Part shown: positions 8,149 to 54,141 of the stretch, in pieces | Numbering within the stretch: position 1 is the stretch's first letter | Layout of the letters: each line of letters starts with the position of its first letter | NCBI RefSeq assembly: GCF_006345805.1 | Contig: NC_042997.1 | Span: 42,594,001 to 42,658,000, forward strand | DNA from: Octopus sinensis | Taxonomy: Eukaryota | Direction of reading: 5' to 3' | DNA: 64,000 nucleotides | Translations under genes and position numbers: made by a program | Notes under the pieces: model-generated | What the model was told of the DNA's origin: nothing | The model's input: only the letters and a program-made list of their open reading frames with translations | Database searches by the model: none

Positions 8149-8343
8149 CTATCTAATAGCTGCTTGTATATCTTCACGTTTGTGAGTTCCGTCACAGAAA
8201 GGTCGGTCGTCAGTCTGTTTGCAGTTACACAACCAATATTCTTTAGTTGTTTCAACTTTGAAACGAAGTGGAACATATTTTTTCAGATTCCCTTTCTTAA
8301 ATGATGTCCCTTGAAGTGCCTTGTGTGCCCCGTCACAAAATGG
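8149..8343 (-). CDS. CISD3: CISD3 exon 3 (PFCDGAH...WLCNCKQTDDRPFCDGTHKREDIQAAIR*)
   Basis: Acceptor tattcacag|CCA, 64 codons plus TAG. Completes motif 1 and contains motif 2. Not in the supplied ORF track; read manually. Confidence 0.95.
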   Translation of the reverse strand, partial: PFCDGAHKALQGTSFKKGNLKKYVPLRFKVETTKEYWLCNCKQTDDRPFCDGTHKREDIQAAIR

Positions 8344-52800: not shown

Positions 52801-54141
52801 GCTAAGTCGTTATTAAGCTGAATTTTGGAATATAAATTAACATGAAGTTTTGGTGAAAGGTTTCTACTTAGATCTCTTTAAAACATAAATTTGTATCAAA
52901 GAGCAAAGGGTGATCTCAAGCAGGTGGGTATCAAAAAGGTTAAATCAGTTGTCAGAACCTCTGAAACTCTGGTTTTCCTCTCATGATTCAAGAGAAGAAT
53001 ATATTGGAATGATTTTGCAATAACTTCTCCAAGCCTAAAGGAAAACCTGAATTTGATATTTCAATCTCTTGAAACACTTGGGAATTGTGGGGTGCCATCA
53101 TTATGTGTGCAGCTGACAAACAGGCTTATGTAGTGAAGAACCCAGATAGGCCAATTGGCATGGATCTACAATTTTGAGAGAACCTTCTGCTGGTTTCAAG
53201 CAAAGGGAATATCCTTGAGTAAAGAGTTAGCTTTTGCTTTTTTTATATATAATTTTAGTTCTTTTATCCTTCTGTGTTTCTTGTAAATATTTCATGTACA
53301 CTTTATGTACATTTATATACCTGTTACTCATACATAAATTCTGTGTACTTGGCACTAGTTACAACCGCACTCAGTTGATGGGTCTTTTCCTTTGACGTGA
53401 TAGCTTCATTAGTTTTGAAGTAATGAAAGGTAGATTTAGTACACTCTGTAAAGTGGTTGGCATTAAGAAGAGCATCTAGCTATAGAAACCAAAGCCAAAA
53501 CAGATATTGGAGCTCAGTGTAGTCCTCCAGCTCATTGGAACCATCCGACTCATGCCAGCATGGAAGATAGATATTAAATGATTATAATGGTGACGATGAT
53601 GATTGTTATTTCCTCACTGCATAATTATATATCTCTAGTTAACTTTTTAGCACTAACTTAATCATCATCATCATCATCATCATTGTTTAACGTCCGTTCT
53701 CCATGCTAGCATAGGTTGGACGGTTCGACCGGGGATCTGGGAAGCCAGAAGGCTGCACCAGGCTCCAGTCTTATCTGGCAATGTTTCTACAGCTGGATGT
53801 CCTTCCTAATACCAACCACTCCGTGAGTGTAGTGGGTGCTGTTAAAAGTCAAATGTTTCAGCCATGGATACAAAACCGTGAGTGTGACAGGATATGAAAT
53901 GCTATCTTCTTGGCATGGTTGTCCAGAGCTCTATCAGTTTGGACATCCAGGTCCTTACTAATAACTGCCCAGAATCAATTATTCAGTTGAACAATAATTG
54001 CCCTTATGTTTATATATAGAGAGATATCAATATTTCTGGATCTTCACAACTGCATCTTATTCTTCTTTCAGGTATTATTCTCCTGGTTATTCAGAAACAC
54101 TTCTTGAGAAAGTTGAAAATTTCCAGATCACTGCCAACTGA
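22869..54141 (+). CDS. SPAG6: Sperm-associated antigen 6 (PF16 orthologue, axonemal central-pair armadillo-repeat protein), full spliced CDS, 9 exons, 509 aa
   Basis: join(22869..22893,37664..37926,38811..38994,42441..42646,44942..45115,46330..46482,49767..49958,51935..52197,54072..54141) = 1530 nt, open, all GT-AG. The translation runs colinearly with the human SPAG6 sequence as I recall it, from [15 protein letters not shown] to [17 protein letters not shown]. Confidence 0.97.
22925..23630. repeat. Compound (TA)n/(CA)n microsatellite at the start of SPAG6 intron 1
   Basis: Direct reading. Confidence 0.95.
23996..24033 (-). ncRNA. Variant hammerhead-like motif (A6U, extra A)
   Basis: Minus strand: UCUUU-CUGUUGA-A-GAGC(GUAG)GCUC-GAAACGUA-AAAGA. 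Confidence 0.45.
27041..27928 (+). mobile_element. 5'-truncated RTE (BovB-like) LINE with 11-bp TSD
   Basis: [63 protein letters not shown], with an (AATAAG)n tail. TSD ATGCAACAGAT at 27030-27040 and 27929-27939. Confidence 0.95.
28923..29177 (-). mobile_element. RTE 3'UTR-only copy
   Basis: Same family; shares the diagnostic GTCTTATCTGGCAATG with the copy at 53660-53840. Confidence 0.8.
29178..29342 (-). mobile_element. Helitron 5' fragment (same family)
   Basis: Matches the 5' ~165 bp of the other copies; 3' CTAG end absent. Confidence 0.75.
29523..29781. repeat. 119-bp inverted repeat with 21-bp spacer
   Basis: 29523-29641 vs 29663-29781 with a few mismatches; a single-arm copy lies at 32457-32595. 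Confidence 0.95.
29653..29703 (+). ncRNA. Variant hammerhead-like motif with G3:C8 core swap
   Basis: UUUGUCA-GUGAACA-G-GUCGC(9)GCGAG-GAAA-AUAU-U-U-UGGCAAA. The opposite arm of the hairpin preserves GCGAC and UGACAAA. Confidence 0.5.
30142..30420. repeat. ~105-bp tandem repeat, about 2.5-3 units
   Basis: AGAAATAGCAGCCAAATCTCCCTCAAATCACACCTTACTGTCTTATGTATG occurs three times. Confidence 0.8.
30909..31141 (+). mobile_element. ~230-bp SINE (family 4)
   Basis: GAAGGCGGCGAGCTGGCAG..GAGTTCAAATTCC..TAATAAAGAAAT. Further copies near 32880(+), 46555(-), 47167(-), 47825(-) and 51440(-). Confidence 0.8.
31198..31699 (-). mobile_element. Non-autonomous Helitron, long form
   Basis: Same termini and internal segment as the 6869 copy. 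Confidence 0.85.
31720..32432 (-). mobile_element. RTE 3'UTR copy carrying an expanded 17-bp minisatellite
   Basis: Family sequence at 31720-31975 runs directly into the GGCATCGAGGCGGCGCT array. Confidence 0.8.
31975..32432. repeat. GC-rich 17-bp minisatellite (GGCATCGAGGCGGCGCT variants), ~27 units
   Basis: Direct reading of the tandem units. Confidence 0.9.
33108..33375. repeat. Degenerate ~42-bp tandem repeat, ~6 units
   Basis: Recurring TTGGGCCTCACAGAGGCAAAGTAGCTGAGTTCCTTTCGAG-like unit. Confidence 0.65.
33955..34292 (+). mobile_element. RTE 3'UTR-only copy
   Basis: Same family. Confidence 0.8.
35830..36145 (+). mobile_element. CR1 LINE 3' end fragment
   Basis: [29 protein letters not shown] plus 3'UTR; same family as the 36680 and 54545 copies. 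Confidence 0.85.
36680..37185 (-). mobile_element. CR1 LINE 3' end fragment
   Basis: [48 protein letters not shown], a CR1 C-terminal signature, with an (ATT)n tail. Confidence 0.9.
37664..37926 (+). CDS. SPAG6: SPAG6 exon 2 (VFEQYQK...SLAEQN)
   Basis: ttccag|TTTTTG ... CAAAAT|GTAAGG, 263 nt. Confidence 0.97.
38557..38660 (-). ncRNA. Minimal type I hammerhead ribozyme motif (Penelope-LTR type)
   Basis: Minus strand: UAAC-CUGAUGA-[13-bp stem II, 51-nt loop]-GAAAC-ACGU-GUC-GUUA. Confidence 0.75.
38811..38994 (+). CDS. SPAG6: SPAG6 exon 3 (RFYKKSAAF...YIAAHNA)
   Basis: tgacag|AGATTC ... GCAG|GTAAAT, 184 nt. Not in the ORF track. Confidence 0.97.
40326..40761. mobile_element. Two tandem TTAA-flanked MITEs (CCCTTT...AAAGGG; piggyBac-like)
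   Basis: TTAA at 40322, 40538 (shared) and 40762. The two units of ~212 and ~220 bp are similar to each other. Confidence 0.65.
41053..41439 (-). mobile_element. Full-length tRNA-derived SINE with 11-bp TSD
   Basis: Head GGAGGCGCAATGGCCCAGTGG (A box)..GGTTTCGATTCC (B box). TSD ATCCAGATAGT at 41042-41052 and 41440-41450. CpG-rich. Confidence 0.9.
42441..42646 (+). CDS. SPAG6: SPAG6 exon 4 ([10 protein letters not shown]...NPNSRLK)
   Basis: gatcag|AACTT ... CTAAAA|GTAAGT, 206 nt. Confidence 0.97.
42798..43257. repeat. Compound (GAT)n/(GGT)n trinucleotide array
   Basis: Direct reading; begins ~150 bp after SPAG6 exon 4. Confidence 0.95.
43585..43826. repeat. (CA)n/(CT) compound microsatellite
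   Basis: Direct reading. Confidence 0.95.
44122..44458 (-). mobile_element. tRNA-derived SINE (family 2)
   Basis: A box TGGCTCAGTGG and B-box-like GCTCGAATCCC. Older copies at 13372-13690 and 35218-35520. Confidence 0.85.
44942..45115 (+). CDS. SPAG6: SPAG6 exon 5 (RQVFSALSQ...AKHTPE)
   Basis: tttcag|AGACAA ... CCAGAG|GTACAC, 174 nt. Confidence 0.97.
45468..45879 (+). mobile_element. tRNA-derived SINE (family 3), full length
   Basis: GGCGCAGGAGTGGCTGTGTGG..GGTTCAGTCCC head, central TA/TG microsatellite, (GTAAAAGA)n tail. Confidence 0.85.
46330..46482 (+). CDS. SPAG6: SPAG6 exon 6 ([10 protein letters not shown]...AVIVSK)
   Basis: atgcag|TTATCC ... TCTAAG|GTACAG, 153 nt. Confidence 0.97.
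47425..47644. mobile_element. Mariner-derived MITE
   Basis: TIR-like GGGGTGCTGAAAAATTCCTGGCTTT / AAAGCCAGGAACTTTTCAGTATCC. Confidence 0.7.
48600..48952 (-). mobile_element. RTE 3'UTR-only copy
   Basis: Same family; ends in two or three GGCATCGGCCCGGCGCT-type units. Confidence 0.8.
49767..49958 (+). CDS. SPAG6: SPAG6 exon 7 (GAIQLTQ...SEDLQIK)
   Basis: ttatag|GGTGCT ... ATCAAG|GTAAAG, 192 nt. Confidence 0.97.
50728..51147 (-). mobile_element. tRNA-derived SINE (family 3), full length, inverted relative to 45468
   Basis: Reverse complement is near-identical to 45468-45879. Confidence 0.85.
51935..52197 (+). CDS. SPAG6: SPAG6 exon 8 (CKKALKNIL...YPEEVI)
   Basis: gtgcag|TGCAAG ... ATCAA|GTATGT, 263 nt. 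Confidence 0.97.
54072..54141 (+). CDS. SPAG6: SPAG6 exon 9 coding part ([22 protein letters not shown])
   Basis: tttcag|GTATTAT, phase 2 matches exon 8, TGA at 54139-54141. Confidence 0.95.

What the first reader, a model, noticed from the sequence alone, without database searches (positions are those of the whole stretch)
8149..54141. CISD3-SPAG6 adjacency mirrors two paralogous human regions: candidate ancient linkage split after genome duplication
Seen: CISD3 and SPAG6 are immediate head-to-head neighbours. Established (recalled human gene order): 17q12 has MLLT6-CISD3-PCGF2-PSMB3-PIP4K2B, and 10p12 has MLLT10-DNAJC1-COMMD3-BMI1(PCGF4)-SPAG6-PIP4K2A. MLLT6/MLLT10, PCGF2/BMI1 and PIP4K2B/PIP4K2A are paralog pairs. 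Inference: CISD3 and SPAG6 were linked in the bilaterian ancestor and reciprocally lost from the duplicated vertebrate segments. Retention here would be notable because coleoid genomes are heavily rearranged.
Basis: partly seen in the sequence, partly recalled or inferred. Interest (0 to 1): 0.75.

Follow-up and report, generated by a model that had tools for sequence, protein, structure and literature searches.

The report
Ancient CISD3–SPAG6 head-to-head gene pair
In this octopus window a mitochondrial iron-sulfur gene (CISD3) and a cilia/sperm-tail gene (SPAG6) start only 284 bases apart on opposite strands, an arrangement also found in limpet, ribbon worm, acorn worm and amphioxus, so it dates to early bilaterians and was split between two duplicated chromosome regions in vertebrates; it is a clean new example of a known phenomenon.

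Summary
The window is Octopus DNA. CISD3 lies on the minus strand (3 coding exons, 8149-22584). SPAG6 lies on the plus strand (9 coding exons, 22869-54141). Their start codons are 284 bp apart.

The same head-to-head pair occurs in Lottia, Lineus, Ptychodera and Branchiostoma, with spacers of about 0.3-1.4 kb.

Neighbours tie the block to both human regions:
- Lottia has COMMD3 next to CISD3.
- Ptychodera has CISD3-SPAG6-PSMB3-PIP4K2.
- In pike, a PCGF/BMI1-type gene lies directly upstream of SPAG6, and no CISD3 is nearby.
- In four other vertebrates the two genes sit on different chromosomes.

The ancient linkage is therefore shown. Differential loss after vertebrate genome duplication is strongly supported.

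There are three caveats.
- A PCGF gene occupies the CISD3|SPAG6 junction in both human regions, so the shared-promoter contact was probably broken before the duplication.
- Retention in a coleoid is not exceptional, since hundreds of metazoan microsyntenies survive there.
- The pair was not found next to each other in three cnidarians or a sponge, although a sea anemone has COMMD3-CISD3 head-to-head.

The shared spacer carries the only strict RFX X-box in the 64 kb, 77 bp upstream of SPAG6. It is a new member of a known kind.

The parts
8149..8343 (-). CISD3 coding exon 3, including the stop codon. It encodes PFCDGAH...CNCKQTDDRPFCDGTH...AAIR: the end of CDGSH motif 1 and all of motif 2.
13803..13997 (-). 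CISD3 coding exon 2. It ends ...CTCGHSKQQ with a GT donor. The intron splits the first CDGSH motif at the same point as in Lottia, Ptychodera, amphioxus and Actinia.
22525..22584 (-). CISD3 coding exon 1 (MSLLAQHACSVHLSKTGLGQ), with the ATG at 22584 and a GT donor.
22585..22868 (.). The 284-bp divergent spacer between the two start codons (26% G+C). It is the presumed bidirectional promoter plus both 5'UTRs.
22779..22792 (+). RFX X-box GTTACCTTAGCAAC, 77 bp upstream of the SPAG6 ATG. It is the only strict X-box in the 64 kb.
   Evidence: (1 match, 0.13 expected)
22869..22893 (+). SPAG6 coding exon 1, a micro-exon encoding MSLRQVLQ plus 1 nt. The same micro-exon (MSxRQ[VI]LQ) occurs in Lottia, Lineus, Ptychodera, amphioxus, pike and Amphimedon.
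37664..37926 (+). SPAG6 coding exon 2
38811..38994 (+). SPAG6 coding exon 3
42441..42646 (+). SPAG6 coding exon 4
44942..45115 (+). SPAG6 coding exon 5
46330..46482 (+). SPAG6 coding exon 6
49767..49958 (+). SPAG6 coding exon 7
51935..52197 (+). SPAG6 coding exon 8
54072..54141 (+). SPAG6 coding exon 9, including the stop codon

Best explanation
CISD3 and SPAG6 form an ancient divergently transcribed (5'-5') gene pair that already existed in the last common ancestor of protostomes and deuterostomes. The octopus keeps it intact.

The two genes start a few hundred bases apart, so their core promoters share one short spacer. That spacer holds the conserved RFX X-box that drives SPAG6 in ciliated and flagellated cells.

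Any chromosomal break or insertion in so short a spacer would damage at least one promoter. This is the most likely reason the pair survived while both first introns swelled with repeats (inferred, not shown).

The pair sat in a larger block of the order COMMD3 - CISD3 - SPAG6 - PSMB3 - PIP4K2. In vertebrates that block was duplicated. One copy (human 17q12) kept CISD3, PSMB3 and PIP4K2B. The other (10p12) kept COMMD3, SPAG6 and PIP4K2A.

Shown here: gene identities, adjacency, orientation and spacing in five lineages, neighbour identities, the conserved X-box, and separation in vertebrates.

Inferred: that the spacer acts as a bidirectional promoter, that constraint rather than luck kept the pair, and that the vertebrate split was differential loss after 2R.
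For: Octopus: the ATGs are 284 bp apart on opposite strands, and both ORFs are intact.

The same pair occurs in the same orientation elsewhere:
- Lottia: SPAG6 ATG at L001:9311(-), CISD3 from 9944(+).
- Lineus: 308-bp spacer.
- Ptychodera: 1352-bp spacer.
- B. belcheri: 486 bp to the nearest CISD3 first exon, in two assemblies.

Neighbours:
- Lottia COMMD3 (8f2r_C, 4.9e-31).
- Ptychodera PSMB3 (1e-100) and PIP4K2.
- Actinia has COMMD3 head-to-head with CISD3, 269 bp apart.

Vertebrates:
- Pike has PCGF (RING+RAWUL) followed by SPAG6, with no CISD3 within 10 kb.
- The genes are on different chromosomes in four species.
- The 17q12 gene order is given in PMC2958950. MLLT10, BMI1, COMMD3 and SPAG6 are listed together in PMC11815765.

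X-box:
- There is one strict match in the window, against 0.13 expected per 64 kb, and it lies 77 bp upstream of SPAG6.
- The TAGCAAC half-site lies within 200 bp upstream of the SPAG6 ATG in 7 of 7 species. The background is 0.044 per 300 bp.
- It is the only non-AT-rich 7-mer shared by all five spacers.
- RFX2 binds the mouse Spag6 X-box (PMC2797782). The RFX motif is functional in the choanoflagellate spag6 promoter (PMC10530576).

General model: 5'-5' conserved pairs, and their reciprocal loss after duplication, are described in PMC3514665.
Against: - No expression or transcription-start data were available, so shared promoter use and co-regulation are untested.
- CISD3 is a general mitochondrial protein and SPAG6 is cilium-specific. 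This argues against simple co-expression.
- The X-box is also present where SPAG6 is unpaired (pike, sponge). It is a SPAG6 element, not proof of a shared one.
- The pair is absent around CISD3 in Dimorphilus, so it can be broken without lethality.
- It was not seen in Stylophora, Actinia, Clytia or Amphimedon (contig lengths).
- A PCGF gene lies between the CISD3 and SPAG6 positions in both human regions. No PCGF gene was found within about 4-7 kb of the pair in Lottia and Ptychodera, or among the genes called in the Lineus and amphioxus loci. The vertebrate stem therefore rearranged the block.
- Human gene strands and the 2R status of 10p12/17q12 come from memory, not from tools.
- Ecdysozoa were not sampled.
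Confidence: 0.85

Rival explanations
1. Passive survival. The pair is ancient but nothing functional holds it together. It simply has not yet been hit, because a spacer of about 300 bp is a tiny target. The two genes are regulated independently by separate core promoters.
For: - The two proteins have different expected expression breadth (mitochondrial Fe-S protein versus axonemal central-pair protein).
- The X-box goes with SPAG6 even when it is unpaired.
- Dimorphilus and vertebrates separated the genes and kept both.
- Spacer length varies from 284 to 1352 bp.
Against: - All five slowly rearranging lineages sampled keep both the adjacency and the 5'-5' orientation over more than 500 My.
- Most neighbouring pairs are scrambled over such times, and conserved pairs are enriched for 5'-5' orientation and short spacers (PMC3514665).
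- The octopus spacer stayed at 284 bp while the adjacent introns took up at least 18 repeat copies.
Confidence: 0.3
2. The vertebrate separation was not differential loss after genome duplication. One gene moved to a new site by translocation or retroposition, or the block split before the duplication.
For: - A PCGF gene occupies the junction in both human regions, so at least one rearrangement predates the duplication (PMC2958950, and recalled order).
- Recalled gene strands in human do not match the Ptychodera orientations (untested recollection).
Against: - Each vertebrate gene still sits beside other members of the invertebrate block: CISD3 with PSMB3 and PIP4K2B, and SPAG6 with COMMD3 and PIP4K2A.
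- Interleaving the two human orders reproduces the composite invertebrate order COMMD3-CISD3-SPAG6-PSMB3-PIP4K2.
- A moved gene would not land next to the paralogue of its old neighbours.
Confidence: 0.1
3. The adjacency arose independently in several lineages, or it is an artefact of assembly or annotation.
For: None beyond the general possibility. The Lottia CISD3 model is partial.
Against: - Six independent assemblies from five phyla or subphyla show the same order and orientation.
- The coding exons were confirmed directly on the DNA by tblastn and motif search.
- With roughly 10^4 genes, chance adjacency of one given pair is about 10^-4 per lineage.
Confidence: 0.01

Closest known systems
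Conserved ancestral microsyntenic pairs (CAMPs) of the co-regulated 5'-5' class (Irimia et al. 2012, PMC3514665)
   Same: - Two unrelated genes are kept adjacent across distant metazoan lineages.
- The orientation is divergent and conserved.
- The intergenic distance is short.
- The paper also predicts the fate seen here in vertebrates: reciprocal loss of one member from each duplicated copy.
   Different: - I could not check whether CISD3-SPAG6 is among their roughly 600 pairs, because the supplement is not held.
- No paper in the library names both genes.
- Co-expression, a feature of that class, is untested and a priori doubtful for this pair.
2R ohnolog regions with differential gene loss, here the human 10p12 / 17q12 members of the 2q-10p-12q-17q paralogon
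   Same: One invertebrate block (CISD3-SPAG6-PSMB3-PIP4K2, with COMMD3 adjacent) corresponds to two vertebrate regions. These share duplicated genes (PCGF2/BMI1, PIP4K2B/A, MLLT6/10) and split the single-copy ones between them.
   Different: - The duplication timing of those paralogues was not tested here.
- A PCGF gene sits inside the junction in vertebrates but was not found next to the pair in the invertebrate loci.
RFX/X-box promoters of motile-cilia genes (mouse Spag6, PMC2797782; Salpingoeca spag6, PMC10530576)
   Same: A near-palindromic X-box (GTTACC TT AGCAAC) lies within 100 bp of the start codon. Its AGCAAC half-site is conserved in all seven SPAG6 promoters examined.
   Different: Here the X-box lies in a spacer shared with a mitochondrial gene on the other strand. 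Binding and direction of action are untested.
Metazoan microsynteny blocks retained in coleoid cephalopods (Schmidbaur et al. 2022, PMC9023564)
   Same: It is an ancient linkage surviving in a heavily reorganised coleoid genome.
   Different: - Those blocks require at least three genes, so a bare pair would be missed.
- In the octopus window no third block member (COMMD3, PSMB3, PIP4K2) lies within 8-10 kb.
- Their supplement as held mentions only a CISD1/2-type CDGSH gene.

Membership tests
Conserved ancestral microsyntenic pair, co-regulated 5'-5' class | Orthologues adjacent in several distantly related metazoan lineages | tested here: met
   Octopus (window), Lottia, Lineus, Ptychodera and B. 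belcheri x2. Exons were verified on the DNA.
Conserved ancestral microsyntenic pair, co-regulated 5'-5' class | Divergent orientation, conserved across lineages | tested here: met
   All five lineages have the two ATGs facing away from each other.
Conserved ancestral microsyntenic pair, co-regulated 5'-5' class | Short intergenic distance | tested here: met
   ATG-to-ATG spacers are 284 bp (octopus), 308 bp (Lineus), 486 bp (amphioxus, nearest first exon), at most 632 bp (Lottia) and 1352 bp (Ptychodera).
Conserved ancestral microsyntenic pair, co-regulated 5'-5' class | Conserved sequence elements in the spacer | tested here: inconclusive
   The X-box/TAGCAAC element is shared by all five spacers. 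However, it also accompanies unpaired SPAG6 in pike and sponge, so it need not be a shared element.
Conserved ancestral microsyntenic pair, co-regulated 5'-5' class | Correlated expression of the two genes | not testable with these tools
   No expression data were available.
2R paralogon with differential loss | A single outgroup region holds orthologues of genes from both vertebrate regions | tested here: met
   Ptychodera has CISD3-SPAG6-PSMB3-PIP4K2. Lottia has COMMD3-CISD3-SPAG6.
2R paralogon with differential loss | Each vertebrate region lacks the partner gene | tested here: met
   Pike has PCGF followed by SPAG6, with no CISD3 within 10 kb. CISD3 and SPAG6 lie on different chromosomes in Pleurodeles, Microcaecilia, Bombina and Narcine. 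The human 17q12 list has no SPAG6.
2R paralogon with differential loss | The shared paralogue pairs (PCGF2/BMI1, PIP4K2A/B, MLLT6/10) date to the vertebrate-stem duplications | not tested
   This rests on established knowledge. No gene trees were made, and a literature search found no explicit statement.
CISD3 / MiNT (two-CDGSH mitochondrial protein) | Two CDGSH [2Fe-2S] motifs in one chain, without the CISD1/2 N-terminal membrane domain | tested here: met
   The motifs are CTCGHSKQQPFCDGAH and CNCKQTDDRPFCDGTH. PF09360 matches in two stretches. The best PDB hit is human CISD3, 6avj. Named CISD3 orthologues are the top hits.
SPAG6 / PF16 (axonemal central-pair armadillo protein) | Full-length orthology to SPAG6/PF16 | tested here: met
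   Residues 1-505 match SPAG6 9ijj at 6e-265 and Chlamydomonas PF16 7n6g at 4e-204. Arm repeats are present.
RFX-regulated (X-box) promoter | X-box GTNRCC N0-3 RGYAAC close to the start of a cilia gene | tested here: met
   Window 22779-22792 is the sole match in 64 kb, against 0.13 expected.
RFX-regulated (X-box) promoter | RFX protein binds and activates | not testable with these tools
   Shown only for mouse and choanoflagellate spag6 in the literature.

The most novel reading that the evidence does not exclude
The spacer is a truly shared, RFX-driven bidirectional promoter. In most bilaterians the mitochondrial Fe-S protein CISD3 would then be switched on together with the central-pair protein SPAG6 in ciliated cells and sperm. 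That would be a half-billion-year-old regulatory coupling of mitochondrial iron-sulfur or redox handling to motile-cilium building, which vertebrates dissolved after genome duplication.
Probability: 0.15. Interest if true: 0.6.

Novelty: new member of a known kind. Interest (0 to 1): 0.42.

Why it matters
The pair gives a compact, easily checked anchor for one ancestral bilaterian gene block, COMMD3-CISD3-SPAG6-PSMB3-PIP4K2.

It shows in miniature how vertebrate genome duplication resolved a tightly packed gene pair by keeping one member in each copy. This outcome was predicted in general terms by Irimia et al. 2012, but it does not appear to have been reported for these genes.

It also offers a natural test case for how a tissue-specific (RFX/X-box) promoter and a housekeeping promoter coexist within about 300 bp.

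It does not change any general picture. Hundreds of such pairs are known, and coleoids retain many of them.

Tried and rejected
1. I looked for other block members in the window flanks. tblastn with Lottia COMMD3, Ptychodera PSMB3 and PIP4K2 exon 1 found nothing in 1-8148 or 54142-64000. This is uninformative, because octopus intergenic distances are large.
2. I looked for other genes in the window. The ten largest remaining ORFs have no Pfam family above its cut-off. There is no tRNA and no Rfam family. These ORFs are repeat or retroelement debris.
3. An apparent second, better CISD3 copy inside Ptychodera SPAG6 was my own artefact. The FASTA file held several loci and the hit belonged to Dimorphilus L003. 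This was corrected.
4. Three look-ups returned nothing: Pomacea CISD3, Priapulus SPAG6 and B. lanceolatum CISD3.
5. The strict X-box pattern is absent from the Lottia and Lineus spacers. Only the AGCAAC half-site with a degenerate left half is present there.
6. Literature searches found nothing for the pair:
   - No paper has both gene names.
   - None has SPAG6 with microsynteny.
   - None states the 10p12/17q12 paralogy with these genes.
   - The supplements of Irimia 2012 and Simakov 2013 are not held.
   - The Schmidbaur 2022 supplement, truncated as held, lists only a CISD1/2-type gene.
7. Ecdysozoa could not be sampled with the look-ups available.

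
Full report
**What is in the window.**

The window is Octopus DNA. A CISD3 protein assembled from it is 100% identical over exons 2-3 to the Octopus vulgaris protein P0001.

CISD3 lies on the minus strand in three coding exons: 22584-22525, 13997-13803 and 8343-8149. It encodes 149 aa with two CDGSH motifs. Pfam PF09360 matches in two stretches. The best solved structure is human CISD3, 6avj.

SPAG6 lies on the plus strand in nine coding exons from 22869 to 54141. 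It encodes 509 aa, 505 of which are identical to O. bimaculoides SPAG6. It matches SPAG6 (9ijj, 6e-265) and Chlamydomonas PF16 over its full length.

The finding's limits, 8149 and 54141, are exactly the two stop codons.

The CISD3 ATG is at 22584 and the SPAG6 ATG is at 22869. The genes are therefore divergent, with only 284 bp between their start codons. Intron 1 is 8.5 kb in CISD3 and 14.8 kb in SPAG6.

Nothing else gene-like was found in the window.

**Is the adjacency old?**

I used the proteins returned by the homology searches to fetch their genomic surroundings. The same head-to-head pair is present in four outgroups.

| Species | SPAG6 | CISD3 |
|---|---|---|
| Lottia gigantea | L001 4373-9311 (-) | from about 9944 (+) |
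| Lineus longissimus | L010 1014-9692 (-) | 10001-11907 (+) |
| Ptychodera flava | L002 10001-15872 (+) | 6739-8648 (-) |
| Branchiostoma belcheri (two assemblies) | L007 3700-9514 (-) | from 10001 (+); L008 likewise |

I confirmed the exons on the DNA itself. Every SPAG6 begins with the same eight-codon micro-exon, MSxRQ[VI]LQ.

The gene ranges are bounded by coding sequence, so ATG-to-ATG spacers can be read directly:
- Octopus: 284 bp
- Lineus: 308 bp
- Amphioxus: 486 bp to the nearest alternative first exon
- Lottia: at most 632 bp
- Ptychodera: 1352 bp

Two molluscs, a nemertean, a hemichordate and a cephalochordate thus share the order and orientation. This places the pair in the protostome-deuterostome ancestor.

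**Where the pair is absent.**

- Around CISD3 in the very compact annelid Dimorphilus there is no SPAG6.
- Around SPAG6 in the coral Stylophora and the sponge Amphimedon there is no CISD3 within 10 kb.
- In Clytia the two genes are on scaffolds of different length.
- In the sea anemone Actinia, CISD3 is head-to-head, 269 bp apart, with a 194-aa gene. That gene is COMMD3, matching human COMMD3 8f2r_C at 4.7e-34.

So CISD3-SPAG6 looks bilaterian. CISD3-COMMD3 linkage is older.

**The link to the two human regions.**

- In Lottia the gene on the other side of CISD3 is COMMD3. It matches 8f2r_C at 4.9e-31, and the next best match, COMMD4, is only 5e-5.
- In Ptychodera, SPAG6 is followed by PSMB3 (1e-100 to human beta-3). 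Next comes a type-2 PIP 4-kinase (PF01504, 396 aa; exon 1 matches PIP4K2A/B).
- The composite invertebrate order is therefore COMMD3 - CISD3 - SPAG6 - PSMB3 - PIP4K2.

On the human side:
- 17q12 reads MLLT6, CISD3, PCGF2, PSMB3, PIP4K2B (PMC2958950).
- 10p12 holds MLLT10, COMMD3, BMI1, SPAG6 and PIP4K2A. The order is recalled. The co-location of MLLT10, BMI1, COMMD3 and SPAG6 is seen in PMC11815765.
- Interleaving the two human orders reproduces the invertebrate order, apart from the PCGF gene.

In pike, a 328-aa RING+RAWUL (PCGF/BMI1-type) gene lies directly upstream of SPAG6 on the same strand, and no CISD3 is nearby. In Pleurodeles, Microcaecilia, Bombina and Narcine, CISD3 and SPAG6 lie on chromosomes of different length.

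This is what differential loss from duplicated copies of one block predicts. A gene that had simply jumped would not sit next to paralogues of its old neighbours.

I did not test that the shared paralogues date to the vertebrate-stem duplications. That rests on established knowledge of the 2q/10p/12q/17q paralogon.

**A refinement.**

Both human regions have a PCGF gene at the position of the CISD3|SPAG6 junction. No PCGF gene was found next to the pair in Lottia, Lineus, Ptychodera or amphioxus.

The simplest reading is that the head-to-head contact was already interrupted on the vertebrate stem, after amphioxus diverged and before the duplications. The duplication then sorted two linked genes, not two genes still sharing a promoter.

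**How it probably works.**

The 284-bp spacer is 74% A+T. It contains the only strict RFX X-box in the whole window, GTTACCTTAGCAAC at 22779-22792. This is 77 bp upstream of the SPAG6 ATG. The window has 1 match against 0.13 expected per 64 kb.

Related elements sit 80-200 bp upstream of SPAG6 in the other species:
- Ptychodera: GTTGGCCTTAGCAAC
- Amphioxus: TTTGCCCTAGCAAC
- Pike: GTTGCCCTAGCAAC
- Lottia, Lineus and Amphimedon: degenerate forms that keep the TAGCAAC half-site

TAGCAAC is present in 7 of 7 promoters, against a background of 0.044 per 300 bp. It is the only non-AT-rich 7-mer common to all five spacers.

This fits published work. RFX2 binds a strong X-box in the mouse Spag6 promoter (PMC2797782). 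An RFX motif is needed for full activity of the choanoflagellate spag6 promoter (PMC10530576).

So the SPAG6 side of the spacer is an RFX-type cilia promoter. Whether CISD3 uses the same elements is unknown.

My preferred explanation for the long survival is that two core promoters are packed into a few hundred bases, so any break or insertion damages one of them. That is the co-regulated or 5'-5' class of conserved pairs described by Irimia et al. 2012 (PMC3514665). They also predicted reciprocal loss after duplication.

The main rival is passive survival of a tiny target without any shared regulation. I cannot exclude it, and the different biology of the two proteins speaks for it.

**How new and how interesting.**

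No paper in the library names the two genes together or SPAG6 with microsynteny. The large screens either have supplements I could not read or require blocks of at least three genes (PMC9023564).

The kind of thing is well known, with about 600 conserved pairs described. Coleoids keep as many metazoan microsyntenies as a scallop: 275 against 216.

I rate it a new, tidy member of a known kind and of moderate interest.

**Limits.**

- No ecdysozoan was sampled.
- There are no expression or transcription-start data.
- Human strands and 2R status were not tool-verified.
- The octopus flanks (8-10 kb each side) are too short to say whether COMMD3, PSMB3 or PIP4K2 are still nearby.

Noticed in passing
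L006 (Actinia tenebrosa) 2335-12787: In a sea anemone, CISD3 is head-to-head with COMMD3, with ATGs 269 bp apart, rather than with SPAG6. In Lottia, COMMD3 is the tail-to-tail neighbour of CISD3. CISD3-COMMD3 linkage therefore predates bilaterians, and CISD3 appears to have changed divergent partner.
   Followed up: partly
window 14301-14800 and at least 17 other sites (e.g. 1354-1543, 12538-12876, 15349-15653, 16868-17195, 20487-20746, 28933-29176, 31725-31990, 33967-34293, 48593-48923, 53670-53843): There is an interspersed repeat family of about 200-350 bp, at 72-94% identity, on both strands. It has internal 61-63-bp tandem sub-repeats (12710-12910 and 15205-15484). It fills the introns of both genes but is absent from the 284-bp spacer. 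ARAGORN finds no tRNA-like part.
   Followed up: partly
window 22925-23638: A roughly 700-bp (AT)n/(CA)n microsatellite begins about 30 bp after the donor site of the SPAG6 first exon, immediately next to the shared promoter.
   Followed up: no
window 22525-22584: CISD3 exon 1 in the window encodes ...HACSVHLSKTG..., whereas the database O. vulgaris protein P0001 has ...HACSLHLWKTG... Exons 2-3 are identical. The window may come from a different individual or a sister species.
   Followed up: no
window 8530-8887 (-) and 17955-18407 (+): Two copies of the same retroelement tail (...LPPVSSLVKGRRVQFAGHCCRAE...LLWKPSTRNTRGRTLSY...) lie in opposite orientation in CISD3 introns 2 and 1. Other retroelement-like ORFs occur at 27012-27684, 36839-37168, 54555-54779 and 57588-58150. 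None matches a Pfam family above its cut-off.
   Followed up: partly
window 31974-32432; 42749-43369; 60977-61157: Three tandem arrays: a G+C-rich 17-bp minisatellite of 27 copies, a long CAT/CAC-type triplet run read as poly-His in SPAG6 intron 4, and an 18-bp repeat of 10 copies.
   Followed up: no
L007 10001 and 15358; L008 10001 (Branchiostoma belcheri): Amphioxus CISD3 has two similar alternative first coding exons, MPAMLTAAVVPK... and MLVGAVVPK... Only the first lies close (486 bp) to the SPAG6 ATG. The two assemblies differ by about 1.4 kb in this interval.
   Followed up: partly
L010 10920-11105 and 11734-11898 (Lineus longissimus): The last CISD3 exon, carrying the second CDGSH motif, is present twice in tandem. 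This matches the two annotated isoforms.
   Followed up: no
L002 20203-25872 (Ptychodera flava): PSMB3 and PIP4K2 are themselves a head-to-head pair about 0.8 kb apart, next to SPAG6. This may be a second divergent pair within the same ancestral block.
   Followed up: no
window 22795-22830: Directly after the X-box lies an A-rich stretch with repeated forkhead-like cores (ACAAACA, ATAAACA). This fits the RFX plus FOXJ1 grammar of motile-cilia genes, but it was seen by eye only and not tested statistically.
   Followed up: no
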